This document shows, one piece after another, positions 2,985 to 52,045 of a DNA stretch of 53,894 nucleotides. The notes beneath the pieces are model-generated. The model was not told the DNA's origin. It worked only from the letters and a program-made list of their open reading frames with translations, and ran no database searches. The position numbers and the translations under genes were made by a program. How positions within the stretch are numbered: position 1 is the stretch's first letter; the number at the start of each line of letters is the position of its first letter. The stretch is from Octopus bimaculoides (lineage: Eukaryota): NCBI RefSeq assembly GCF_001194135.2, contig NC_068986.1, positions 73,670,292 to 73,724,185 on the forward strand. Reading direction: 5' to 3'.

Positions 2985-3308
2985 ACATCAGGAGTGGTTG
3001 TGTGGTAAGTAACTTGCTTACCAACCACATGGTTCTGGGTTTAGTCCCACTGTGTGGCACCTTGGGCAAGTGTCTTCTACTATAGCCTTGGGCTGACCAA
3101 AGCCTTGTGAGTGGATTTGGTAGATGGAAACTGAAAGAAGCCCATCATATATATATACATATATATATATGTATGTATGTGCGTGTATATGTTTGTGTGT
3201 CTGTCCTCCTCATCACCACTTGACAACCGACGCTGGTGTGTTTATGTCCCTGTAACTTAATGGTTCAGCAAAAATAAAAAAAAAAGAACAATAGAATAAG
3301 TACTAGGC
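2985..3308 (+). mobile_element. SINE family A (runs into a gap)
   Basis: tRNA-like head with A-box-like TGGTTGTGTGG and B-box-like GGGTTTAGTCCC, body ccttgggcaagtgtcttctactatagcc, internal TA/GT microsatellite, 3' module. Confidence 0.9.
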
Positions 3309-8729: not shown

Positions 8730-9479
8730 CGGAAAAAAAGTTTTAAAAAAATTGTTTTAACCTTAACCAACTAACTAACCATATTCCTGAACCAAGGAGA
8801 GAGGACTGATATGAATAAAATGACAAAAACTGCAAAAAAGAAAAAAAAAGCAGGCTTGAATAGCAGACTAATTACTTTTAAAAGCCTGAAATCTTGGTAA
8901 ATAATTCTTCTCCAACCAGCTAGAATCTCAGTTTCTAAAATTGAGCTTTATGTTTTTATAAATCTCATAATATTTTCCATTTCTGCAATGAAATTAGTTT
9001 TTAAACCTCATTCTTGCATGCTATAATGCTATCTACCATTATTTACATTGTTCCATTCATATGTTGATTTGTCTTCAGTGTTTTTTTTTCTTCTTTCCTC
9101 TTCATTTGTCCAACATTTTCTGCTTTGTCTTTCTTCTCTGCTTTATTTTCTCTCAGATTCTGCCCTCCCCTTCTTTCCTTTCCTCCCCTCTATTCACTGT
9201 ATTCTCTGGTTTTCCTATTTATATTCCTAATTTTTCCCTGTTTATTTATTCTTTACCATTTCCTTTTCTATCCTGCCTTCTCCTCCAACCTACCCCTCCT
9301 CCTCCCAGTCTACCTCTTCCTCCCACCACAAACCATCTTTCTTTGTTCTTCACTCTTCCTCCTTTCAACACAATCAATGAAAGGCATCTCTATATGGTTT
9401 CTCAGCTTGCTAGAAATAGCCAACGAATCTCCCTCCAACCACACTCTACCATCTTAAAAAAAAAAAGGAAGTACAAGTT

Positions 9480-10595
9480 GTATAATGTAGTCTTTGATTT
9501 TATTTATCAGTTTGGTTTGGAAGAAAGGGGCAATACCCATGACTATTGCATGTTCTTCATGATCGTTGATACTGAATGCCTTCAAGTTCTACTTAAACTG
9601 TTGCAAGTGAATAGCTGCAAGAAAGTTAGACTGGAGCCAGGGAGGGAGGTTAGCACATGATATGAGATATGAGGAAAAGAAGGCCTTATTCATGAGTGAT
9701 AGGAGTCAGGAGGCTGAATTGGATGATAAAATTACTGGTGCTGACACTGTAACATGCCAGCTTCAGTATTCAGTCCTCAGAAGAGGCGAAGTTAACTTAA
9801 AAAGCCAAACTTGCTATGTTCAGTTTGGTTTTTGTGTCTTTCCTCACCTATGGACATGAATGTAGGGTAATAATGACCAACAGAGTACCATTGCAAATTT
9901 AAGTGGCTGTAATGGGGTTCCACTGAAGGATCTCTAAGGTACAAAGCTTGGATGTCAGGGAGTCTATCCAGGTCAAGCTGTTACTTCTCTGCATTGAGGG
10001 GTCACAGCTCCAGTACTACAGATGTGTGATTAGAATGTGACAGTGAAGGCATGTGGTTTAGTGGTCAGGGTATTCGGCTTGAAATTGTAAGGTCATGGGT
10101 TTGATTCCCAGTGATGCATTGTGTCCTTCAGCAAGACATTTTATTTCATGTCACTTCAGTTCACTCAGCTGGCAAAAATGAGTTGTACCCGTATTTCAAA
10201 GAACCAAGCTTGTCACATTCTCTGTCATGCTGAATCTCCCTGAGAACTACATTAAGGATACATGTGTCTACAGACTGCTTGGCCACTTGCACGTTAAGTT
10301 CATGAGGATCAAGTGCACGTTAAATTCATGAGGATCAATAGGGTTGGATCAAATGGAAACCTCATTGTCATAACCAACGGAGATCTAGTTAGAGTGTGGC
10401 AATAAAAAATTGAAAGATGGATTATTTAAGCTGGCCCAAATGGCAGGAGAAGTAGAAGTAGACCAAAGAGCAAGATAGCTGGATAATATCTGTAGTCTCA
10501 GCTGGTCATGCTTGAGAATCCAGCAGAAAAGTGTAATGATGGTTGCTCCTGATAGGTAACAAAAGGTAAAGTTACAGTCTTGAGTCATACTGACT
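9480..10595 (+). mobile_element. RTE-clade (Expander/Rex3-like) LINE, RT C-terminal remnant, split by a SINE
   Basis: Translates to ALFMSDRSQEAELDDKI (cf. VLFTSDGRxxxEIDxRI), LTYGHECRV.MTNRV (cf. LTYGHExWVMTER), and after the SINE PNGRRSRSRPK...LDNICSLSWSCLRI (cf. GRRPRGRPRTRWxDxIxxLxWxRLGI). Many stops and frameshifts. Confidence 0.8.
10045..10388 (+). mobile_element. SINE family D nested in the RTE LINE
   Basis: A-box TGGTTTAGTGG, B-box GGGTTTGATTCCC. Degenerate TSD ttagaatgtgaca (10030) and ttagagtgtggca (10389). Confidence 0.9.
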
Positions 10596-10802
10596 CATAA
10601 GGGCCACTTTCCTGGTTTCATGGTGTATAGATCCTCCACCTGGGTGCAATGCCCGACTGTTACAAGATTACTCATATTTGCCAGTTGAGTGGACTGGAGC
10701 AATGTGAAATGAAGTGTTTTGCTTAAGAACACAATGCATCATTCAGTTCAGGAATCGAAACCACAATCTTACAATCATGAGTCCAACACCCTAACCACTA
10801 AT
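10596..10802 (-). mobile_element. SINE with D-type head and a different 3' part
   Basis: Reverse complement of the D head (ttagtggttagggtgttggactcatgattgtaagattgtggtttcgattcc) and of the cttaagcaaaacacttcatttcacattgctccagtccactc core. Confidence 0.75.
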
Positions 10803-11480
10803 TCTCCTACCTCCACGCTCTGGAGGTGGTGCCTAAGGACTCTACTCCCATTACCCTTCCAGGAATAGTGGATGGTGGAGGAGAAATGAATGAGTTAGAA
10901 GTGGCTAAATGGAAGAAACTCATCAAGTATGATGAGCAGAGGCCACTATTGTAGTAGCTGCAGGAAAGGCAGAGAGGGAGGACACAAATGTCTATGGCCA
11001 AATGGTTAAGGAGGTTTGAGAGTAATTTGATGTCGATCAGTCAGTTGGTGATTCTATCAATGCAATCTAAGATGTTTGTGTGTGAAGCAGTGGTACTATT
11101 CCAGCTGTAGGAAGCAGTACTCCATTGTAGGCAACACAAGCATAGCTAGAAGGTGGTGTAGGGGGAAGTCTGCTCTGGGCAACAATTTTATGGAGGTAGC
11201 ACCAATTTTGGGTCTGTTGTAGATAATATGTATTTTCTGTGAAGGCCCAAGGGAAACAAACTGATGGGCCACTCTGGGTGGCACACATTCTAGCTATGCT
11301 AGTGGTGGGTAACAAGCTTTGTAGAGGATTATAAATACATGGAAGCCTGAAGGCCAAGTTTTGAAAGACTGTATCAGATAGTAGCTGGAAGTTTTGATGG
11401 TAGTATTAATATTTGGTGGTGAGAATTTATATAGTGGCTATGTTGATGATGGTGGTCATGTCAATGTAGATGGTGTAGGT
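10803..11480 (-). mobile_element. CR1-clade LINE, RT C-terminal remnant
   Basis: Minus-strand fragments LLAMLVLPTMEYC, TASHTNILD, RLIDIKLLSNLL and YYNSGLCSS. These match the CR1 motif order LYKAQVRPxMEYCSHIW..LDRIQ..RLI..RRxVxSLCLFYRYYxGxCS. Confidence 0.7.
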
Positions 11481-11641
11481 TTATTGTAGGTTAGTCCTTC
11501 TTTATTCTGAATGAAAACAACAACTTCCTTCTACATGTTTAGTCTCGACCTCTGAGTTTTTTCTTTGTTTTATTCTTTAGAAAAAGTAGTTATTTATTAA
11601 CAGCTATATTTTTGAAGAATAAATATAATTGCTGATGATAG

Positions 11642-13431: not shown

Positions 13432-13824
13432 TCCATTATAATAAATGTGAAATTTTATCTGTCTGTTTGTCCAGGACCCATGTAGCTCAGTCTACATTTG
13501 TTCTACATAGACATATTATACCTTTTTGGAATCAGGATGATCCTGGGATTGAAAATCTGCACTTCATTTGGTTCTTGAACATCCAGCATTGGGATCAGGT
13601 CTGGATGAGGATTTGTTATATGCTAACCGTTGAAAATTCAAATTTTAAAAGAACTCCAAAAATTTGTGAACTTACCAGTTTTTCATTAAAACTGAATTTA
13701 AAGTAATACCATGTTGGTCGGGGGTAATACCATATTTGGTAAGGTACCAATGAATGCTTTATTATTATTATTGCTCTCCTTAGTTTTAGGCTGCAGGCCC
13801 AATTAGTTCACTGCAGGAGTGTAG
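13432..13824 (+). mobile_element. Short non-autonomous Helitron, copy 1
   Basis: Starts A|TC, has a tctgtctg tract, and is homologous over about 380 bp to 31210-31560 (-). 3' end is degenerate. Confidence 0.65.
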
Positions 13825-15406: not shown

Positions 15407-15563
15407 GTGCAGGCGTAGCTGTGTGGTAAGAAGCTGGTTTTCCAACCACATGGTCCTGGGTTCAGTTCCACTGCATGACACCTTGGGCAGGTGTCTTCTA
15501 CTATAGCCTTTTGGCTAACTCAAGTGAGTAGATTTGGTAGACAAAAACTGGAAGAAGCCCACC

Positions 15564-17792: not shown

Positions 17793-17975
17793 CATTAACA
17801 CTTAATGCCTATTTTCCATGTTGGCACGGATTGGACGGCTTGGCAAGACCAGCAAGGCCAGGGGCTGTACCAGGTTCCGTTGTCTGTTTTGGCTTGGTTT
17901 CTATAGCTGGATGCCCTTCCTAACACCAATCACTTTACCGAGTGCACTGGATGCTTTTTTATGTGGCACCAGCCT
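17790..17975 (-). mobile_element. Family C short copy
   Basis: ttttccatgttggcacggattggacgg...ctatagctggatgcccttcctaacaccaatcact. Confidence 0.85.
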
Positions 17976-18317
17976 CAAACATATATATGTATATTTAAAA
18001 TTCTTCTCTATCATTTCACCAATTCCACCAATACCAGTTATCAAATCGTTCCACTTTTATTTTATTGGTTCTTGGTACAGTTAAAGTTAATTAAACTTTG
18101 GCATTAAGTGACCTCTTAAATTGTCCTCAACATTATGTGAACTCTTACATTGTCCTTGACATAAAGTAAATTCTTAACAGTAAAGATTTCCTTACAGCTA
18201 TAAACCAGTTGACATTTGTATTGTTTTACATATTGAAAGTTTTATATGAATCATTTCATATATTTTCACTAATTGCTAATTTATATCTTTTCTCTTTCTT
18301 TTTTTTTTACATTACAG

Positions 18318-18357
18318 GTGAGTACTCACGTTTAGTGTAGTAGGTGTGCAGTTACAG
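18318..18357 (+). other. Candidate 40-nt non-coding (5'UTR or RS) exon beginning with a 5' splice site
   Basis: Branch-like GCTAAT at 18275-18280, AG-free pyrimidine tract, TTACAG|GTGAGT at 18317/18318, second donor CAG|GTAAAG at 18357/18358. Stop codons in all three frames. Confidence 0.6.
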
Positions 18358-18554
18358 GTAAAGTGTCAATTTATAAATAACTAACTACACTCATCATCAT
18401 CATCATCATCATTGTTGTTGTTGTTATCATCACTGCCATCATTGGCAACAACTGCAACATCATTTATAGCTTGATTTATTTTGAGTTCTTCGATTAAAAA
18501 TTAATTATTCCATATTGTCTTGGCGATTTTAAGTTCTTCTATGACATAACAGAC

Positions 18555-18717
18555 ATAGCTGTGTGGTAAGAAGCTTGCTTCCCAACCACATGGTTCTGGG
18601 TTTAGTCCCACTGTGTAACACCTTGGGCAAGTGTCTTTTACTATAGCCTTGGGCTGACCAAAGACTTGTGGGTGGATTTGGTAGGTGGAAAATAAAAGAA
18701 GCCTATATATTTATCTA

Positions 18718-20169: not shown

Positions 20170-20530
20170 ACGTAGTGTTTTTGGTACGGAAAGACTTTCA
20201 AACTTCGTATATTTATCTATTTTGTGTTATAGAACAGAAAAATATTTTTGTATTCGAATTTATTTCATGTAAAAAATTGTCTTATTTCGATAATTTCAAC
20301 CAATCACTGACAAGTATTCAGTTGTTTACATTTACTCCTTTGGCTGATTAAGTGATGTAAAGCGTATTTAATCTCCATACCTTCGTTTTATTTGCTTTTT
20401 TCATTTTAAATTTGCTTTAACCCTAACCCTAACCCTAACCTTAGGGTTAGGGTTAATTGTTCAGTGATTGGTTGAAATTACAGAAATACGACAANNNNNN
20501 NNNNTCCGAAGTTTTTAATAACACTAACTT
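20170..20530. mobile_element. Foldback/MITE-like element containing TTAGGG repeats
   Basis: Inverted arms 20277-20313 and 20457-20494, palindromic (CCCTAA)n/(TTAGGG)n at 20417-20456, abuts a 10-N gap. Confidence 0.6.
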
Positions 20531-20538
20531 CAAATAAT

Positions 20539-20926
20539 GTTGTTGTTGTTGGCACTCCGTTGCTTACATCGAGAGTTCCAGTTGATCCAATCAACGGAAC
20601 AGCCTGCTTGTGAAATTAACGTGCAAGTGGCTGAGCACTCCACAGACATGTGTACCCTTAATATAGTTCTTGGGGATATTCAGTGTGACACAGTGTGACA
20701 AGGTTGAACCTTTGAATTACAGGCACAACAGAAACAGGAAGTAAGAGTGAGAGAAAGTTGTGGTGAAAGAGTACAGCAGGGTTCTCCACCATCCCCTGCC
20801 GGAGCCTCGTGGAGCTTTAGGTGTTTTTGCTCAATAAACACTCACAACACCCTGTCTGGGAATTGAAACCGCGATCCTATGACTGCGAGTTCGCTGCCCT
20901 AACCACTGGGCCATTGCACCTCCACC
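20539..20926 (-). mobile_element. SINE family D variant, complete, with TSD
   Basis: 13-bp TSD AACTTCAAATAAT at 20526-20538 and 20927-20939, (CAA)n tail, tRNA-like head. Confidence 0.92.
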
Positions 20927-21769: not shown

Positions 21770-22530
21770 AGGTGCATGCATGACTGGGATTAAGAAGCTT
21801 TTTTCCTCAAACATTTGATCTTGGATCAAATCCCACTGCATGGTAGCTTAGGCAAGTGTTTTTTACTATAGCCAAAAAGTGACCATAGCCTTGTGAGTAG
21901 GTTTGTTAGAAGGAAACTGAAAGAAGCCTGTTGTGTGTGTATGTGTATGTGTGTGTGCATGTGTGTATATATTTGCATGCTTCCTACAGCATTATGAGTA
22001 TTTTAACTCTTATTTCTAGCAATGTAGGTGTCTTGGCAGCCTTAGTCACATTTAGTGATGGCTGAATTTTTCCTTTATGGTATTGCATTGCACTTAACTG
22101 TTTATATGTGTGTGTGTGTGTGCATGTGTGTGTCTATTTATTGGTGTATTTATGTCCCTATAACTTCACAGTTCAGCAAAAGACACCGATAGAATTCTTT
22201 TATTCTTTTATTCTGTTACTAGCTTCAGCTAGAGGCTGGGGCCATGCTGCAGTATGGCCTTTCAAAAAAAAGTAAGTGATACCATTGCCTTGAACTCGAA
22301 CTCACAACTTCTGCTTATTTCCTGACTTGTGAATTAACACTAGGAGGATACTGTCTATAAGTATGGTGCGCTATCCTATTGGGCCACCGGGGCAGACTAC
22401 ATACCAGGTTTCAAAATAAGAAATAACTAAATATTGGGGCTGATTCATTTGATTGAAAAATTTCTTCAAGACAATGCCCCACCATAGTCTAATGACTGAA
22501 ACAAGGAAAAGATAAAAGATAAAAAAAGAA
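21770..22530 (+). mobile_element. Degenerate SINE family A with a nested pre-tRNA-derived insert
   Basis: A head at about 21770. The 3' module is split at accgatagaa | taccagg. Confidence 0.75.
22286..22393 (-). pseudogene. tRNA-Ile-TAT: Intron-containing tRNA-Ile(UAU) pseudogene
   Basis: Minus strand reads GCCCCGGTGGCCCAATAGGATAGCGCACCATACT-TAT-A, then a 39-nt intron starting GACAGTA, then AAGCAGAAGTTGTGAGTTCGAG..GGCA. It parallels metazoan Ile-TAT genes (GCTCCAGTGGCGCAATCGGTTAGCGCGCGGTACTTATA-intron-ATGCCGAGGTTGTGAGTTCGAG). The 3' T-arm and acceptor stem are partly deleted. Confidence 0.8.
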
Positions 22531-26502: not shown

Positions 26503-26625
26503 CAGGCATGGCTGTGTGGTAAGAAGCTTGCTTCCCAACCACATGGTTCTGGGTTCAGTCCCATTGCATGGCACCTTGGACAAGTGTCTTCCACTATAAC
26601 CTCTGACTGACCGAAGCCTTGTGAG
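26503..26625 (+). mobile_element. SINE family A, 5' module
   Basis: gcaggcatggctgtgtggtaagaagcttgcttcccaaccacatggttctgggttcagtccc...gccttgtgag. Confidence 0.9.
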
Positions 26626-26861
26626 TTTAACACAAAATTTCACATTAGCTTTTTGTTCCAACTTATTGTCCATGACAAAAATCGCAGACTACAGCATACA
26701 TGTGATCACAAAAACACAAATTTCATAACTTGTGAAGTAAACACAACAATGTCACTTGGCTCACTGCCTCATGAAGGTCACTGCTAGCTCACACTGCACA
26801 TGCAACTGTGTGCTGCCATCTGTTGTCATGCTACAAAAGTAGTCCAGGAACTTTTTGATAC
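26626..26861 (-). mobile_element. Mariner 5' fragment (TIR plus transposase N-terminus)
   Basis: TIR-like gtatcaaaaagttcctggact. Translates MDNKLEQKANVKFCVKL (cf. mariner EQRxNIKFCxKLGK). Confidence 0.8.
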
Positions 26862-26974: not shown

Positions 26975-27295
26975 TTTTACTTGTTTCAGTCATTAGACTG
27001 AACTCTAGTCAAACAAATCAATCCAGTATTTGTTATTTTTAAGCCTGGTGCTTATTCTCTTGTTCCCTTTCACAGAACTGCTCAGTGACAGGAATGTAAA
27101 CAAACTAACACCGGTTATCAAAGCAGTGGTGCAGGACAAACACACACAATGAGCTTCTTTCAGTTTCTGTCTGCCAAATCCACTCACAAGGCTTTGGTCA
27201 GCCTGAGGCTATAGCAGAAGATACTTGTCCAAGGTGCCACTGAACCTTCAACCATATGGTTTGGAAGCAAGCTTCTTATCACATAGCCACACATA
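26975..27295 (-). mobile_element. SINE family A
   Basis: Reverse complement of the A head, body and tail. Confidence 0.88.
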
Positions 27296-27648: not shown

Positions 27649-27785
27649 ATCATATTTGCACATAAGGGATAATTGATGTTAGTTGGTTTATTTATAGGAG
27701 GTAGGGGGAGAGAGAGAGAGTGGGGGAGAGGTGCTCTGTTATTCTATATTCTTCCTACCTTCCTTCATCTCTACCAGAATAATCT

Positions 27786-27866
27786 ATGTCTGATGTTGTC
27801 CAAATACTTTTAGTCAGAACACTAAGATTGATAACCTTGTGTATATTACAAATAACAGTGTCTTGT
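27786..27866 (+). CDS. Probable first coding exon of the host gene (secreted or membrane protein), MSDVVQILLVRTLRLITLCILQITVSC
   Basis: Exon 27778-27866. Long AG-free pyrimidine tract ending ctctaccag|, in-frame TAA 6 nt before the ATG, 27 open codons, phase-0 donor TGT|GTAAGT. The peptide has a basic n-region, a hydrophobic core and a V-x-C end like a signal peptide. Lies in repeat-poor DNA. Confidence 0.6.
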
Positions 27867-31209: not shown

Positions 31210-31560
31210 CTAGCTCCTGTGGTGGGCTAATTAGGCCTGTAGCCCAAAGCTAAAGAGAGCAATAATAATAAAGCATATATTGGTACCATTCCAATATGGT
31301 GTTATTTTAAATTCAGTTGAAATGAAAAACTTGTTAGTTCACAAATTTTAGGGGTTCTTTTAAAATTTGAATTTTCAACTGTTAGCATTTAACAAATCCT
31401 CATCCAGACCTGATCCCAATGCTGGATGTTCAAGAACCAAATGAAGGGCAGATTTTCAATCCTGAGATCATTCTGATTCCGAAAGGGTACAATATGTCTA
31501 TGTAGAGCAAATGTAGACTGAGCTACATGGGTCCTGGACAAAGAGACAGACAAAATTTTG
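31210..31560 (-). mobile_element. Short non-autonomous Helitron, copy 2
   Basis: Minus-strand 3' hairpin GGGCTA...TAGCCC, then 10 nt, then CTAG-T (31210-31213). 5' end abuts a SINE A. Confidence 0.72.
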
Positions 31561-31571
31561 TGTTTATTATT

Positions 31572-31960
31572 ATAGGCGCAGGAGTGGCTGTGTGGTAAGT
31601 AGCTTGCTTACAAACCACATGGTTCCAGGTTTGGGCAAGTGTCTTCTACTATAGCCTCGGGCTGACCAAAGCCTTGTGGGTGGATTTGGTAGACTGAAAC
31701 TGATAGAAGACCGTCGTATATATGTATATATATGTATATGTGTGTGTGTTTGTGTGTCTGTGTTTGTCCCCCTAGCATTGCTTGACAACCAATGCTGGTG
31801 TGTTTATGTCCCCGTAACTTAGTGGTTCGGCAAAAGAGACTGATAGAATAAGTACTAGGCTTACAAAGAATAAGTCCTAGGGTCGATTTGCTCGACTAAA
31901 GGTGGTGCTCCAGCATGGCCGCAGTCAAATGACTGAAACAAGTAAAAGAGTTAAGAGAGT
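31572..31960 (+). mobile_element. SINE family A, well-preserved copy
   Basis: ataggcgcaggagtggctgtgtggtaagtagc ... atgactgaaacaagtaaaagag. Confidence 0.93.
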
Positions 31961-33999: not shown

Positions 34000-35253
34000 T
34001 ACTGAACTACAAAAGAAACGTCACACTGTAAAAGATTATATGTTTCAGACATGATCACATGATATTGAAATTATATGGATTTTATCACATTTCTAGGTAA
34101 TTTGACATCAGGAAGATGTCACTGATCCTCAACACCAATCTCTTTCAAAATCACAAGGATTGCATGTAGGGTTTGAACTTGCTCACATTTCATGAACATG
34201 GCAATGCTCACGAATACATCTTTATGAAAAGCATGATGCATATGCAAGAAGTTGTCTCATTGGGTATAAAAGACACCCAAATTTACCAGTCTGTCATTCA
34301 TTTCCCGAATGCAGCAAGCATTCCGAGACTGACGCAACATCAAAGGGAGCAAGCCATCGGATGTCTCCATGCTGGTCAATGTCCATTGGTCATTGCTAAT
34401 GATTTGAACCGCAGTATTTGAACATTTGAGAGTTACAATGGCCCGTCAAGATTGCCACTTGCACCGACAGCACTTGCAGGACTGATTGTGGAGGAGAATG
34501 GAATCAGCTAGGCAGACCATAGAGACTCACCACAGAGCCATTTGTGCAGAGACAGTTCGCCGCTGGCTGAGATCTTTCAATCTGTCTTGTCAATGTCTGG
34601 CTAGGGGCACCGTCCTCACAGATTGTCATTCATGGGCACATCTGCAGTGAGCTCAAAAATGTCAGAACTGGGGATACCAGCAGTGGAGGACTGTAGTCTT
34701 CTCTAACAAAAGTTGATATTGCATTTCTGTGGCAGATGGCAGAGCTAGGGTTTGGAGAAGGGGTGAACGTCAGGCTGATGGCTGTGTGGTGGATAGAGAC
34801 TCATGGGGAGGATAGAGCATCATGGTATGGGGCAGGATTGCACTCCACCAGAAACTTGGACCAGTGGTCTTTCAAAACATCAGCCAAGAGTGGGGCAATG
34901 GTGAAACCACTGCTCGCTACATTGACCAAGTGTTGAGACCTCACATTCTGCCATACTGTGCCTGTCATTGGAATCATGTGTTCCAACGCAATAATGCCCA
35001 TCCCCATACAGCCAGGTTGACAACAGACTTCCTCCAACAGCACGATATCCAGACACTGCCATGATCTGCCTTAAGTTCTGACTTGAACCTCATAGAGCAC
35101 CTGTGGGACAAAATCTGAAGAAACTAAATGACATCTGTCCAAGGCCGACAACTGAAGCATAACTCACGACAAGTTTTAACAGTGTGGCAGTCTGTTCATA
35201 AACACTGGTTTCTATTTAGTATGTGTGCAATGTTTCTTTTGTGGTTCAGTTTA
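34000..35253 (+). mobile_element. Full-length decayed Tc1 (DD34E-type) transposon
   Basis: TIRs actgaactacaaaagaaacg and tgtttcttttgtggttcagt. Transposase from about 34320 (ATT in place of ATG): PRLTQHQREQAIG, VFSNKS, IMVWG, FQRNNAHPHTA, SSDLNLIEHLWD. Stops and frameshifts present. Confidence 0.92.
34265..34271 (+). promoter_or_regulatory. TATA box of the Tc1 transposase promoter
   Basis: TATAAAA about 50 nt upstream of the degenerate start codon. Confidence 0.5.
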
Positions 35254-38089: not shown

Positions 38090-39320
38090 TTAGAGATGGA
38101 ACTGAGATTCAACAACATTCATTTTGAAAACTGCTACTGCTGCTGCTGCTACTAATACAACTACTACTACTACAACCACCACCACCACCACTTCCCCTAC
38201 CATCACACCAGAACACCCACATACAGCACCCCCATCACAGCACCCCCACCATGGCACCCTCATCACCTCACTATACCACACTGACCCCATCATCATCCCA
38301 CCACCATATCCTTCTTCCACCTTGATCCCCTGTGTCACACTTAGCAACCTCTTTCTGTAACACTCTAGTTCCGTATTATTATAAAGGCCAGTTTCATTCA
38401 CCAGTGACAATAATTTCCTCTCTTCTCCGGTCTCTTTCTCTTGCCTCAACAACTGTAAACAAGTAGCTGCGGATAAGGTCATGTCTTATACTACCATCAT
38501 TTTCCTTTGCATGTCACCACCATACCACCACCTTCCTCTATTAATGCCATCACTACAACCTTGCCCCTCCATCACTGCCCAGCAACACCATCACTAACAC
38601 CATCACTATATCATCATTATATTATCATTATCACCATAATCACACTCATTTCACTGTCTTTACTACCACCACCACCCTATCATCAGTTTTGGCACCACCA
38701 CCACCACCACCACTGCTATCATTACCACCTCCATTATTGCCAAAACTACCATACTACTTTCACTTTCTCATAAATAACGAAGTCATAATGATACAACAAC
38801 AACAACAACAATGTCAAAAATGTGAAGAACTAAGTTTCCAGTGCCTTCGTCTCTTAGAACTCTTCTTCTGCAATAAATTGGTTTGAATGATTCTGGAGAA
38901 TTCTTTCAAAACTTTGCCTTTTTTTAAAGAAAGAAATTCTGTAAGGATGAAATGGTTGGTGTTGGAGGTGGCGATATCATCCAAAATCATTTTATCTTAT
39001 TGACTGCAAAGACAAGATGGCACCAGCAGATTGTTAAGGCTCTAATCTCAGACATTCTGTCTAGAATATCAGTCATACCATTTTGCATTAATGATACCAT
39101 TTTTTGATTCATTCGATTGAAAACAATCTTACAGATTTCACTTTTAGCTTTCAGACACTCTTTCACCTCTTTCTTGTTTTCTTTATTTTTAGGTGGTGGT
39201 GGTGGTGGTGAGGGTGAAGAGAGGGTACTGGTTTGTTTGATTTGTGTAATAAACAACAACAGCAGCAACAGCAATGGCAAATATTTGAACAAAAGACAAA
39301 CAAAATAATGTAACGCTGTC
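38090..39320. repeat. Low-complexity (ACC/CAT/CAA/CTA)n region
   Basis: Directly visible. Explains the poly-T, poly-H and poly-P ORFs. Confidence 0.9.
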
Positions 39321-42014: not shown

Positions 42015-42430
42015 TCTATCTTTTATTTTTTACTTCTTCCATTCATTGCCCGCGGCTATGTTGGGGCCACCACCTTGAAGTGTTTAGTCAAACAAATCAA
42101 TCGCAGTACTTTTTTTTTCCTCAAATCTGGTACTGTTGGTATCCTTTGCTGAATTACTAATTCATGAGGATGTAAACAAACCAACTCCAGTTGTTAAGCA
42201 GCGATGGTCGATAAAGACAAAATACAAAGACACACGCACACACACACACACACGCACACGCGTGCGTGTGCGCACAGGCTTTTTGCCATTTTCATCTACC
42301 AGATTCACTCACAACACTTTGATTGGACTAAGGCTATAGTGGAAGACACTTGTACAAGGTGATACAGAGTAGGATTGAACTAGAACCATGTGGTTGAGAA
42401 GCAAACTTCTTATAACACAGCCATACTTGT
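42015..42430 (-). mobile_element. SINE family A
   Basis: Reverse complement of the A consensus. Confidence 0.88.
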
Positions 42431-45790: not shown

Positions 45791-46459
45791 GGTTATATAC
45801 TTTAAAACGTTTTACATGGTGTGGTGTGTGTGTTTTGTAATGTCAGTGTACATTATTTGTGTCTTCATTAATTGTATACACATGTTAATTTATTTAGAAA
45901 TTTCTCTACAAACACACTTTGTCAGTACTTAATTTAATTCATGGTTATAAATGGTACTGATATGCAAATGAGCAAAATCAGTGTTGATCATATTCACAGT
46001 TGTTGTAAATTACTTCATTTCTCTTTTTGCTGATTGGATGTACTAAATATTCCTGATGAATTGATAATAATCATCAGAAACAATCATGTTTGTTCTTCAC
46101 TGCATTCAGCATGCATAGAAAGCCTTGTAATTTAATGGCTCTTGCAATAACTGTCTTGTTTTACAGACACATGCATATGTGTGTGTGTGCATATGTTTTT
46201 TGTGTATTTGTGTGTGTGTGTGCATATGAATGCGTGTTGATGTGTGTGTTTGTGCATATGTGTGTGTGTGTGTGCATATTGTGTGTGTGTGTGTTGTCAT
46301 GTTGAAATTTTGTATTATCTGTGCTTTGTGTTGAGTGCATTTTTCTTTACTCAAAGACTATATTCAGTACCACATTTCATCGAGTACCTACCACATCAAA
46401 ACAAAAGCTCTGAGTCTATTCTTTACCTGGAAAGAGATAATAAAGCAAAGATAGGAAAA

Positions 46460-48260
46460 ATTTTATAGGTAGCTCTGCATGGATTCTGAATGCTTCTGAA
46501 AGCAGTCTGGATTACACAATGCAAGAATTTGAGGTGAATTTTCCAGGTCTGATAAAAAAACTGCAGAAAAATTTAGAACAGAATTTCAAAAGCTTTACCT
46601 AAGAAGAAAGATATGATGATGACAGACAAGTCTTCAGTATAGATGAGACTGCTTTATTGTGGAAGCATTCAGTCACAAAGACTTTCATTGCTAAAGAAGA
46701 AGAAGAAAGTAAAAACTGCTTCTGGCTATAAAATGTTAAAAGACAGAATCACACTGAATTGTAAACAATCACCTTGAATTCTTACTTTGTACAGTCTAAA
46801 CTGCTTTTTGAGGCATTTAAAACACCCAGAGCAACATGATAGGAATTGCTGATGGTAATTTCAAACTAAAACCAATGGTAATGAATCATATACAAAAATC
46901 CAACCTCATTCAGAGGCTACAAGTAACAAAGAATATCAGTCATTTAGCATTCAAGTGAAAAAGTGTGGGTTGAAGAAGTTCTTTGTCAAAGATTTACCCT
47001 GTTGGGTAAATCTTTGACAATCAAATCTTTGTAATCAAAATAATCTAATTTCAATAATCTAGCTTGCTTCTGGATAATCTTTGCCTCTCTAGAATGGACT
47101 AGGTAGAGCAGGAGAAAACATGTGGATGAAAAGGGTCACTGAAGAGGTCACAAACGTGTGATGAAAGATTTCCAGACAATGGACATAAGATAGAATAAGA
47201 ACAATAATAAGTGAGTAAAGAACAAAAAGAAAAAAATATGTTCCAACATATAGGTGCAGGAGTGGCTGTGTGGTAAGTAGCTTGCTTACCGACCACATGG
47301 TTCCAGGTTCAGTCCCACTGCATGACACCTTGGGCAAGTGTCTTCTACTATAGCCTCGGGCTGACCAAAGCCTTGTGAATGAATTTGGTAGACGGAAACT
47401 GAAAGAAGCCTGTCGTATATATGTAAATATATATGTGTGTGTGTGTGTGTTTGTGTGTCTGTGTTTATCCCCCCACCATCGCTTGACAACCGATGCTGGT
47501 GTGTTTACGTCCACGTAACTTAGTGGTTTGGCAAAAAGGGACCAATAGAATAAGTACTAGGTTTACAAAGAATAAGTCCTGGGGTCGATTTGCTCGACTA
47601 AAGGCGGTGCTCCAGCATGGCCACAGTCAAATGACTGAAACAAGTAAAAGAGTAAAGAGTATATGATTTCACATCAGGAATATTGCAAAACAAATTCCTA
47701 AACGTATCTTTTGGATAATCGTTCTAGACATAATCCTGCTATAAGTGACTTGTGTAAAATTGTGTGAAGATTGTTTTTACTCCTTAATGCAATATCTACT
47801 TGGCAACCTATAAGTTCAGGATAATAGCAAAGTTCAAAACCAATTATGTGAAGATCACATCTGAATAAGCAATACAGGCTAATATGAGTGATAATTAGGC
47901 TTCAATGGCTGAGTTCTGGAGAAAATTCAAGCGTTTAAAATGTAATTAAAAGCATTTGAGAGTCTTGGCATTGAGTGATGTCAAATAACATGAGAGCTGT
48001 TTGAAACAAACCTTTGCTGCATTGTGTGAATGATTTGCCAGAATTTAGTCAAGAAATAGCTGCAATTATTGATAAGATTACTACCCTTGCAGATGAATTA
48101 GACTTCGATGAAATAGATTTGACAAATGCATAAGATTTATTGGATTTGCATCGTGAAGAGGTGAGTGATACTAGTCTCATCAGCTTTCATGAACAGTATG
48201 CAGACAAATGCAAAGTTGAATGTACAGAGGGAGAAATTGCAGCAAAAGAGAAATGAGAGT
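46460..48260 (+). mobile_element. Tigger/pogo (CENP-B-like) transposase remnant, split by a SINE A
   Basis: FIGSS.W, ADKKTAEKF, RQVFSIDETALLWK, KTFIAKEE, KDRITL, then KIVF.L.N.....QP, FWRKF, IIDKITTLADELDFDEID. Confidence 0.8.
47250..47660 (+). mobile_element. SINE family A, well-preserved full copy
   Basis: All modules present. Confidence 0.95.
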
Positions 48261-50264: not shown

Positions 50265-50680
50265 TCATTACTCTCTTTTACTTGTTTCAATCATTTGACT
50301 GCGGCCATGCTGGAGCACCACCTTTAGTCGAGCAAATCGACCCCAGGACTTATTCTTTGTAAGCCTAGTACTTATTCTATCGGTCTCTTTTGCCAAACCG
50401 CTAAATTACAGGGATATAAACACACCACCATCGGTTGTCAAGTGATGTTGGGGGGACAAACACAGACACACAAACACACAAACACACACATATATATATA
50501 CATATACATATATATGACGGGCTTCTTTCAGTTTCCATCTACCAAATCCACTCACAAGGCTTTGGTCGGCCTGAGGCTATAGTAAAAGACACTTCCCCAA
50601 GGTGCCATGCAGTGGGACTGAACCCGGAACCATGTGGCTGGTAAGCAAGCTACTTGCCACAAAGCCACTCCTGCACCTAT
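50265..50680 (-). mobile_element. SINE family A, well-preserved full copy
   Basis: 4 differences from the 47250 copy over about 100 nt of the 3' module. Confidence 0.95.
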
Positions 50681-51868: not shown

Positions 51869-52045
51869 CATGCATACATACATACATACATATATACAAT
51901 GGCCTTCTTTCAGTCTCCATCTGCCAAATACACTCACAAAGCTTTGGTAGGACTGAGGCTATATTAGAAGACACTTGCCCAAGATGCCATGCAGTGAGAC
52001 TGAACCCGCACCAGGTGGTTGAGAAGCAAGCTTCTTGCCACACAC
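51600..52045 (-). mobile_element. SINE family A
   Basis: Reverse complement of the A consensus with an internal CA/TACA microsatellite. Confidence 0.9.

What the first reader, a model, noticed from the sequence alone, without database searches (positions are those of the whole stretch)
18267..18363. Candidate recursive splice site (ratchet point) with an RS-exon in a mollusc long intron
Seen: a branch-like motif, an AG-free pyrimidine tract of about 25 nt, then TTACAG|GTGAGT, so using the acceptor regenerates a strong donor at zero distance. A second donor CAG|GTAAAG lies 40 nt downstream, and the 40-mer has stops in all three frames. GTGAGTACTCAC (18318-18329) is also a perfect 12-bp palindrome covering the regenerated donor. 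Established: this geometry defines Drosophila ratchet points and vertebrate RS-exons, which occur in very long introns. Inference: this large + strand gene removes its 5' intron stepwise or toggles a UTR exon. I do not recall recursive splicing being characterised in cephalopods. The palindrome could modulate competition between the two donors.
Basis: partly seen in the sequence, partly recalled or inferred. Interest (0 to 1): 0.78.

Follow-up and report, generated by a model that had tools for sequence, protein, structure and literature searches.

The report
Unverified recursive-splice-like motif in non-coding DNA
A textbook-looking "ratchet point" (a splice acceptor fused to a splice donor, with a second donor 40 bases on) is really in the sequence and is rare for one window, but hundreds are expected per genome by chance, and nothing available here shows that the site is transcribed, conserved or used.

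Summary
On a generic splice-site matrix the donor is the best in the window on either strand, and the acceptor ranks 11th of 2,795 on the + strand.

Chance gives a site this strong in about 1% of such windows. That is roughly 500 per 2.7-Gb genome, or about 30 with the downstream donor as well.

The interpretation (recursive splicing in the 5' intron of a + strand gene) could not be tested:
- I found no exon, host gene, transcript or orthologous sequence.
- Strong splice-like motifs are equally common on both strands.

Indirect hints fit a + strand gene body but are weak: CpG o/e of 0.25, and AATAAA and T>A strand asymmetry.

My estimates are about 0.47 unused chance composite, 0.30 real recursive site and 0.13 ordinary small exon. 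If real, it would be a new member of a known kind. One strand-specific total-RNA-seq track would settle it.

The parts
18269..18280 (+). Two branch-point-like motifs, CTAAT (18269-18273) and CTAAT (18276-18280). They lie 45 and 38 nt upstream of the AG.
   Evidence: Read from the sequence. They match the metazoan yUnAy consensus (own knowledge).
18286..18308 (+). Uninterrupted 23-nt pyrimidine tract inside a 76-nt AG-free zone (18240-18315).
   Evidence: longest pyrimidine run 18286-18308, previous AG at 18238, and 81% pyrimidine over -40 to -4.
18312..18317 (+). Acceptor TTACAG, with T,T at -6/-5.
   Evidence: Acceptor matrix score 11.2 bits, rank 11 of 2,795 + strand AG sites. TT at -5/-6 is reported for 99.5% of Drosophila ratchet points.
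18318..18325 (+). Donor GTGAGTAC, immediately after the acceptor AG (the would-be regenerated 5' splice site).
   Evidence: Donor matrix score 13.4 bits, rank 1 of all GT sites on both strands.
18318..18357 (+). 40-nt segment between the two donors (the would-be cryptic RS-exon). It has stops in all three frames and its length is not a multiple of 3.
   Evidence: On its own it folds no better than shuffles (-6.6 kcal/mol, z +0.35).
18358..18363 (+). Second donor, CAG|GTAAAG.
   Evidence: Score 8.1 bits. A weaker one, tag|GTGTGC, lies at 18343|18344 (7.3 bits).
18307..18340 (.). Imperfect palindrome or hairpin centred on the perfect 12-mer GTGAGTACTCAC (18318-18329). It covers both the acceptor AG and the donor.
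   Evidence: arms 18308-18324 and 18323-18339, 82% complementary. RNA MFE -10.7 kcal/mol, z -2.5, with 2 of 200 shuffles as stable. On the minus strand the same palindrome gives aac|GTGAGTAC (7.7 bits, rank 57).

Best explanation
The composite is real as sequence, but it is most likely a fortuitous 'pseudo ratchet point'. A T-rich tract ending in CAG happens to be followed by GTGAGT in repeat-rich, CpG-poor non-coding DNA. The site is then either not transcribed in the + sense (intergenic, or antisense to a gene) or not productively used.

Shown: the motif and its strength, its chance frequency, and the absence of any recognisable exon or gene in the window.

Inferred: that it is unused. If the + strand does turn out to be intronic sense RNA, this explanation fails and rival 1 takes over, because a site of this strength would be hard for a spliceosome to ignore.
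For: - The core motif is at chance level.
- RS-like composites at looser thresholds occur at exactly the chance number, and on both strands. One example is ttccag|GTAAAG on the minus strand at 46426.
- Strong decoy splice motifs are abundant and strand-symmetric. Donors of at least 10 bits number 10 (+) against 13 (-). Acceptors of at least 10 bits number 22 against 18.
- An equally strong composite is expected about 0.009 times per window. That is about 500 times in a 2.7-Gb genome, or about 30 with the downstream donor. A genome scan will therefore turn such sites up without any function.
- No gene context was found. There was no Pfam domain in 129 ORF segments, no protein match to the presumed exon at 27786-27866, and no Rfam or tRNA hit.
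- Macchi et al. describe most of the O. bimaculoides genome as intergenic.
- 12-bp palindromes are commonplace.
Against: - For a single window the composite is unusual: p about 0.01, or about 6e-4 with the downstream donor.
- It matches, feature for feature, the a-priori definition of ratchet points and RS-exons. That includes TT at -5/-6, a cryptic exon near the ~50 nt typical of Drosophila RS-exons and out of frame, and a ratchet donor stronger than the RS-exon donor.
- CpG o/e of 0.25 with GpC o/e of 1.04 suggests germline methylation. In octopus, methylation is concentrated in gene bodies.
- AATAAA is the most strand-asymmetric frequent hexamer (57 on + against 98 on -), and T>A skew accumulates from about 9 kb onward. 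This is what sense-strand transcription of the + strand would give.
- My exon screens were insensitive. Pfam missed even the Tc1 remnant, and long chimeric protein queries demonstrably lose true hits.
Confidence: 0.47

Rival explanations
1. A genuine recursive splice site with a cryptic RS-exon. The + strand is the sense strand of a long intron.

Proposed steps (all inferred):
1. U2AF and U2 recognise the CTAAT branch points, the pyrimidine tract and the CAG.
2. The 40-nt segment is defined as an exon with help from the downstream donor CAG|GTAAAG.
3. The upstream exon is joined to 18318, which regenerates exon|GTGAGTAC.
4. That donor is much stronger than the downstream one, so it wins the competition. 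The 40 nt leave with the second lariat, and no trace remains in the mRNA.
For: - All cis features are met.
- T,T at -6/-5 as in 99.5% of fly ratchet points.
- The RS-exon length is close to the ~50 nt typical of flies, and it is out of frame with stops.
- The ratchet donor (13.4 bits) is stronger than the RS-exon donor (8.1 bits). In flies this relation predicts skipping.
- The composite is rare by chance.
- Hints of a + strand gene body.
Against: - No transcript, host gene, strand or conservation evidence of any kind.
- The presumed downstream exon is unsupported.
- Motif matches alone predict poorly where this has been studied in vertebrates (own knowledge of Sibley et al. 2015, not re-read here).
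- Hundreds of equally good chance sites are expected per genome.
- Recursive splicing is not documented in any mollusc in the searchable literature, so its density in this clade is unknown.
Confidence: 0.3
2. An ordinary small exon (18318-18357, 40 nt) that merely begins with GTGAGT. It could be a non-coding 5' UTR or lncRNA exon. It could also be a frame-shifting 'poison' cassette that is included in some transcripts through the donor at 18357|18358.
For: - Strong acceptor and a usable donor 40 nt apart.
- Stops in all frames fit a non-coding or NMD-targeting exon.
- Annotated exons that start with a 5' splice-site motif are known in hundreds in human (abstract of PMC6224609).
Against: - The internal GTGAGTAC donor outscores the exon's own donor by about 5 bits. 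In flies that relation drives skipping rather than inclusion.
- 40 nt is short for exon definition (own knowledge).
- No transcript evidence.
Confidence: 0.13
3. A DNA-level or repeat-derived feature rather than an RNA signal. The 32-34-nt imperfect palindrome could be a remnant of a mobile-element end or a protein-binding dyad. The pyrimidine tract could be the antisense tail of a retroposon, and the splice-like reading would then be incidental.
For: - The palindrome extends beyond the 12-mer.
- The site is flanked by SINE-like repeats about 360 bp upstream and 190 bp downstream.
- A weak 24-nt inverted repeat (71% complementary) brackets 18196-18471.
Against: - The 587-bp block 17959-18545 has no other copy in the window.
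- The flanking inverted repeat is weak enough to be chance.
- Palindromes of this size are common.
- No known motif was recognised.
Confidence: 0.06
4. The GTGAGT is the donor of a non-coding first exon that ends at 18317, with transcription starting a few hundred bases upstream on the + strand. The pyrimidine tract then lies inside that exon.
For: CAG|GTGAGTAC is the best donor in the window.
Against: - There is no promoter-like or CpG-rich sequence upstream: CpG o/e is 0.18-0.30 in the surrounding 1-kb bins.
- A branch point, pyrimidine tract and AG-free zone directly upstream fit an acceptor much better.
Confidence: 0.04

Closest known systems
Drosophila intronic ratchet points with cryptic RS-exons (Hatton 1998; Burnette 2005; Duff 2015; Joseph 2018, 2021)
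   Same: - Juxtaposed (Y)n-TTNCAG|GTRAGT.
- A prominent pyrimidine tract and TT at -5/-6.
- A short out-of-frame cryptic exon (about 50 nt in flies, 40 nt here) closed by a weaker downstream donor.
   Different: - There is no evidence of a host long intron, of RNA intermediates, or of the ultraconservation that marks fly ratchet points.
- The organism is a mollusc, where the phenomenon is undescribed.
Vertebrate RS-exons in long neuronal genes (Sibley 2015; Blazquez 2018, PMC6224609)
   Same: An AG|GURAGU site plus a downstream 5' splice site that defines an RS-exon, which would act as a poison exon if included.
   Different: - Vertebrate examples lie in very long introns, often first introns, of long genes. 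They were found from RNA data and conservation, not from motifs (own knowledge).
- Here the gene, the intron length and its expression are all unknown.
Pseudoexons and decoy splice sites in long introns (e.g. DMD pseudoexons, PMC7175933; decoy exons, PMC7373989)
   Same: Intronic or intergenic sequence with good-looking acceptor and donor pairs that is normally not included in mRNA. The window holds many such decoys on both strands.
   Different: This one has unusually strong sites and the zero-distance acceptor-donor arrangement.

Membership tests
Zero-nucleotide ratchet point (Drosophila type) | Juxtaposed strong 3' and 5' splice sites, (Y)n NCAG|GTRAGT | tested here: met
   TTACAG|GTGAGT at 18312-18323. 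Acceptor 11.2 bits (rank 11 of 2,795). Donor 13.4 bits (rank 1 on both strands).
Zero-nucleotide ratchet point (Drosophila type) | TT at positions -5/-6 and a prominent pyrimidine tract | tested here: met
   T,T at 18312-18313 and a 23-nt pyrimidine run.
Zero-nucleotide ratchet point (Drosophila type) | Lies on the sense strand inside a long intron of an expressed gene | tested here: inconclusive
   No exon or gene was found. The screens were insensitive, because both missed the Tc1 control. CpG o/e of 0.25 and AATAAA and T>A asymmetry weakly favour a + strand gene body.
Zero-nucleotide ratchet point (Drosophila type) | RNA intermediates: upstream-exon-to-site junction reads, lariats starting at the regenerated donor, saw-tooth coverage | not testable with these tools
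   No transcriptome or read data for this organism is reachable. Four ORFs around the site are not on record in the assembly index.
Zero-nucleotide ratchet point (Drosophila type) | Evolutionary conservation of the AG|GT core above its flanks | not testable with these tools
   No cephalopod genome is in the searchable DNA collections. An exact-match scan of the metagenome contigs for a 26-mer across the site found nothing.
RS-exon (vertebrate and fly exon-definition model) | A downstream 5' splice site within about 30-100 nt that defines a short exon | tested here: met
   CAG|GTAAAG at 18357|18358, 8.1 bits, 40 nt downstream. The chance of a donor this good in that interval is about 0.06.
RS-exon (vertebrate and fly exon-definition model) | Regenerated donor stronger than the RS-exon donor (predicts skipping); exon out of frame or with stops | tested here: met
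   13.4 against 8.1 bits with the genomic CAG context. Only the intronic part, GTGAGTAC, is certain, because positions -3 to -1 would come from the unknown upstream exon. The length of 40 is not divisible by 3, and there are stops in all frames.
Ordinary annotated exon | Present in a mature transcript or protein | tested here: inconclusive
   The 40-mer cannot encode protein. The neighbouring presumed coding exon 27786-27866 has no match among 5.8 billion proteins. Non-coding transcripts could not be searched.

The most novel reading that the evidence does not exclude
This is the first recursive splice site seen in a cephalopod, and in any lophotrochozoan. It would carry the fly-type signature (TTNCAG|GTRAGT plus a roughly 40-50-nt cryptic RS-exon), implying that exon-defined recursive splicing of long introns goes back to the bilaterian ancestor.

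A more speculative addition, about 0.04 on its own: the 34-nt hairpin that pairs the acceptor arm with the donor region gates the first step and is dismantled by it.
Probability: 0.3. Interest if true: 0.55.

Novelty: new member of a known kind. Interest (0 to 1): 0.3.

Why it matters
Recursive splicing is documented in flies and vertebrates. I found no paper characterising it in molluscs.

Cephalopods have large, repeat-rich genomes and large nervous systems (own knowledge). It would therefore be useful to know whether long introns are removed stepwise there, and with which signature (fly-like or vertebrate-like).

On its own, one unvalidated motif changes nothing. The null is substantial, at hundreds of equally good chance sites per genome.

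The novelty label applies only if the site is real. My single most likely reading is that it is not used.

Tried and rejected
1. Host gene from coding exons.
- ORF lists, a splice-site-flanked ORF scan and Pfam on 129 ORF segments gave nothing.
- Two long X-linked chimeric protein searches also gave nothing. These negatives are unreliable: one search contained the Tc1 segments that hit strongly once searched in a 365-aa query.

2. Other assemblies or transcripts of the locus.
- Exact-protein look-ups of four ORFs round the site found none on record.
- A scan of the metagenome contigs for a 26-mer across the site found 0.

3. Taxon check.
- The Tc1-like remnant's named relatives include Octopus bimaculoides (41% identity), Littorina and Haliotis.
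- The closest hits come from unnamed or metagenomic contigs, so the species is not established.

4. An RNA gene under the palindrome.
- Rfam gathering found 0 and tRNA search found 0.
- The only relaxed hit is snoR53Y at 21.5 bits against a 43-bit cut-off, E 0.43, which I rejected as chance.

5. Repeat origin.
- The 587-bp block has no second copy in the window.
- The weak inverted repeats round it were judged to be chance.

6. Strand inference.
- SINE orientation is 7 + against 4 - and uninformative.
- U1-type hexamers show no strand asymmetry.

7. The C/A-rich block at 38.1-38.75 kb with extreme GC skew was inspected as a possible promoter or exon. It is (CCA)n-like low complexity.

Full report
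OBSERVATION

The sequence is exactly as described. On the + strand, from 5' to 3':
- Two branch-point-like CTAAT motifs at 18269-18273 and 18276-18280.
- A 23-nt uninterrupted pyrimidine run at 18286-18308, with 81% pyrimidine over -40 to -4.
- No AG for 76 nt (18240-18315).
- The acceptor TTACAG ending at 18317, abutted by GTGAGTAC.
- A second donor, CAG|GTAAAG, at 18357|18358. The intervening 40 nt have stops in all three frames and a length not divisible by three.
- GTGAGTACTCAC (18318-18329), a perfect palindrome.

- The palindrome continues imperfectly to 18308-18339 (82% complementary).
- Positions -6/-5 are T,T. Duff et al. found this in 99.5% of Drosophila ratchet points against 44% of ordinary introns.

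IS IT MORE THAN CHANCE?

The nine-base core is not. CAGGTRAGT occurs once against 0.80 expected, and AGGTRAGT four times against 3.45.

The full composite is unusual for a single window.
- I scored sites with a generic metazoan position matrix. This is my own approximation from memory of human splice-site frequencies, not trained on this organism.
- The donor scores 13.4 bits, the best GT in the window on either strand.
- The acceptor scores 11.2 bits, rank 11 of 2,795 on the + strand.
- One of 600 order-1 Markov windows produced a site this strong.
- 100 Mb of order-4 Markov sequence trained on the window produced nine. That is about 0.009 per window counting both strands.
- A donor of at least 8 bits at 25-100 nt downstream adds a factor of about 0.06.

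Scaled to a genome of about 2.7 Gb, this gives roughly 500 equally strong chance sites, or about 30 with the full geometry. The genome size is my recollection for Octopus bimaculoides, and the species of this window is not established.

At looser thresholds the window holds exactly the chance number of acceptor-donor composites: 2 against 1.4, 3 against 3.0, and 11 against 11.3. They lie on both strands, for instance ttccag|GTAAAG on the minus strand at 46426.

Strong decoy splice motifs are abundant and strand-symmetric. Donors of at least 10 bits number 10 against 13, and acceptors of at least 10 bits number 22 against 18.

Perfect 12-bp palindromes are ordinary: 30 non-microsatellite examples against about 18 expected.

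SURROUNDINGS

The window is a draft assembly with ten N gaps. It has 36% G+C and is rich in microsatellites. 22% of it is repeated within itself.

The site sits in a 587-bp block (17959-18545) that has no second copy in the window. Repeats flank the block, and the downstream one belongs to a family of 11 SINE-like copies.

I found no coding exon:
- Long ORFs are microsatellite or gap artefacts.
- A scan for open frames flanked by good splice sites gave nothing that looks like protein.
- Pfam found nothing in 129 ORF segments.

These are weak negatives. Pfam missed the obvious Tc1-like transposase remnant at 34170-35061. Two long chimeric protein searches also returned nothing. Yet the same Tc1 segments gave hits down to E = 5e-51 when searched in a short query.

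It matched nothing, and its donor is poor (TGT|GTAAGT, 4.7 bits, rank 230). The 'exon at 27778' is therefore unsupported.

Named relatives of the Tc1 remnant include proteins from Octopus bimaculoides, Littorina and Haliotis. This fits a mollusc but does not prove one, because the closest hits are from unnamed or metagenomic contigs.

Rfam and tRNA scans were empty. The only relaxed hit is far below threshold.

IS THE + STRAND A TRANSCRIBED INTRON?

This is the crux, and it could only be approached indirectly.

CpG depletion.
- CpG observed/expected is 0.25 with GpC at 1.04. Unique 1-kb bins fall to 0.03-0.2, while SINE-bearing bins reach 0.4-0.66.
- Macchi et al. count 80.66 million CpGs (both strands) in O. 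bimaculoides. I convert this to a genome mean of about 0.5-0.6 using my own figures for size and composition.
- They report that fewer than 10% of CpGs are methylated. These cluster in the bodies of a set of highly expressed genes, while the mostly intergenic remainder is unmethylated.
- A window this depleted therefore looks like long-term germline-methylated DNA, that is, a gene body. This is an inference, not a measurement.

Strand asymmetry.
- AATAAA, which I tested as a pre-chosen hexamer, is the most strand-asymmetric of the 161 frequent hexamer pairs: 57 on + against 98 on -.
- Its ratio is 0.58 against 0.84 for all A-rich AT-only hexamers (p = 0.03 against that ratio). AAAAAA runs the other way.
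- T>A skew accumulates steadily from about 9 kb to the end of the window, but not in the first 9 kb.
- Depletion of the polyadenylation hexamer and T>A excess on the sense strand are known for mammalian transcription units (own knowledge). They would point to the + strand here.
- The signal is bumpy, overlaps (TTTA)n-like low complexity, is absent for ATTAAA, and is unvalidated in molluscs.

SINE orientation (7 against 4) and U1-type hexamers show no asymmetry.

I take these hints to raise the chance that the site lies in + sense intronic RNA to roughly one half, no more.

THE HAIRPIN

As RNA, 18307-18340 folds into a hairpin of -10.7 kcal/mol (z = -2.5; 2 of 200 shuffles as stable). It pairs the acceptor arm with the sequence just after the donor.

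The perfect 12-mer alone can give only a 4-bp stem. After a first splicing step the 5' arm would be gone. The 40-mer by itself folds no better than shuffles (-6.6 kcal/mol, z = +0.35).

So if the structure matters at all, it would affect recognition of the acceptor before the first step. A z of -2.5 in a 48-nt window is also expected many times over in 54 kb.

MECHANISM AND PROBABILITIES

If the + strand is intronic sense RNA, the anatomy predicts the fly-type pathway:
1. The 40-nt segment is defined as an exon, using the branch points, the pyrimidine tract, the CAG and the downstream donor.
2. The upstream exon is ligated to 18318.
3. The regenerated GTGAGTAC donor outcompetes the weaker CAG|GTAAAG, so the 40 nt are removed.

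In Drosophila, Joseph et al. showed in vivo at the Bx and kuz ratchet points that the stronger donor is the one used. [quoted passage not shown] All of that is matched here, but none of it has been observed for this locus.

Weighing the rarity of the composite and the weak context hints against the large genomic null and the total lack of RNA or conservation evidence, I put:
- About 0.47 on an unused chance composite.
- 0.30 on a real recursive site.
- 0.13 on an ordinary small non-coding or poison exon.
- 0.06 on a DNA-level or repeat-derived feature.
- 0.04 on a first-exon donor.

These numbers are soft. They move strongly with the unknown density of recursive sites in cephalopods.

COMPARISON WITH WHAT IS KNOWN, AND NOVELTY

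The closest known things are Drosophila ratchet points with cryptic RS-exons, vertebrate RS-exons, and plain pseudoexons. The sequence-level membership criteria are met. The criteria that actually define membership (sense-intron location, RNA intermediates, conservation) were inconclusive or untestable.

No paper in the searchable library treats recursive splicing in octopus, cephalopods or molluscs; the only co-mentions are incidental. A confirmed site would therefore be a new member of a known kind in a new phylum. That would be interesting to splicing and cephalopod genomics specialists, but it would not surprise them, since the mechanism is shared by flies and vertebrates.

VERDICT

It remains a motif-only candidate. 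One RNA-seq track or one multi-species alignment would settle it.

Noticed in passing
window 1-53894 (strongest from about 9000 onward): AATAAA is the most strand-asymmetric frequent hexamer: 57 on + against 98 on -. T>A skew accumulates steadily from about 9 kb to the end, but not in 1-9 kb. This could mark + strand transcription starting near 9 kb, or it could reflect (TTTA)n-like low complexity.
   Followed up: partly
window 1-53894: Strong CpG depletion: o/e is 0.25 overall, 0.03-0.2 in unique 1-kb bins and 0.4-0.66 in SINE-bearing bins, with a normal GpC o/e of 1.04. This looks like long-term germline methylation, which in octopus is reported mainly in gene bodies.
   Followed up: partly
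window 46400-46440, minus strand (first base after the AG = 46426): A second acceptor-donor composite lies on the opposite strand: ttgctttattatctctttccag|GTAAAG, with an acceptor of 12.2 bits. It shows that such juxtapositions occur on both strands of this window.
   Followed up: partly
window 34170-35061, + strand: A degenerate Tc1-like transposase (HTH_Tnp_Tc3_2 / DDE_3 relatives) is split over several reading frames. The best relatives are 60-71% identical over the DDE segment. Named ones come from Octopus bimaculoides, Littorina saxatilis and Haliotis cracherodii.
   Followed up: partly
window 2999-3139, 15410-15540, 18550-18700, 21791-21925, 26503-26626, 27155-27287, 31587-31708, 42289-42424, 47265-47407, 50523-50665, 51905-52044: A family of about 140-bp SINE-like repeats with 11 copies at 73-92% identity, 7 on + and 4 on -. 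Each is followed by microsatellite-rich tails, and one copy starts 190 bp downstream of the finding.
   Followed up: partly
window 13475-13598 (+) and 31410-31533 (-): A roughly 124-bp segment is present twice in inverted orientation about 18 kb apart. The translated frames are nearly identical (THVAQSTF...IQHWDQ). It is probably another dispersed repeat.
   Followed up: no
window 38100-38750: A C/A-rich, (CCA)n-like low-complexity block with extreme GC skew (-0.46). It accounts for the skew trough at 36-42 kb and shows no sign of an exon or promoter.
   Followed up: yes
window 9300-11500: The highest G+C in the window (0.41-0.43) with positive GC skew (0.18-0.25). It also holds a cluster of strong splice-like motifs on both strands, including the top-scoring exon-like candidate 10811-10957 on the minus strand. 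CpG is still depleted, and part of the stretch is a repeat also seen at 20528-20695.
   Followed up: no
window 18102-18159: A 29-nt tandem duplication (83% identity) lies about 160 nt upstream of the finding.
   Followed up: no
method: the search for homologous proteins returned nothing for a 4,915-aa X-linked chimeric query, although the query contained segments that hit at E = 5e-51 when searched in a 365-aa query. Negative results from long chimeras should not be trusted.
   Followed up: yes
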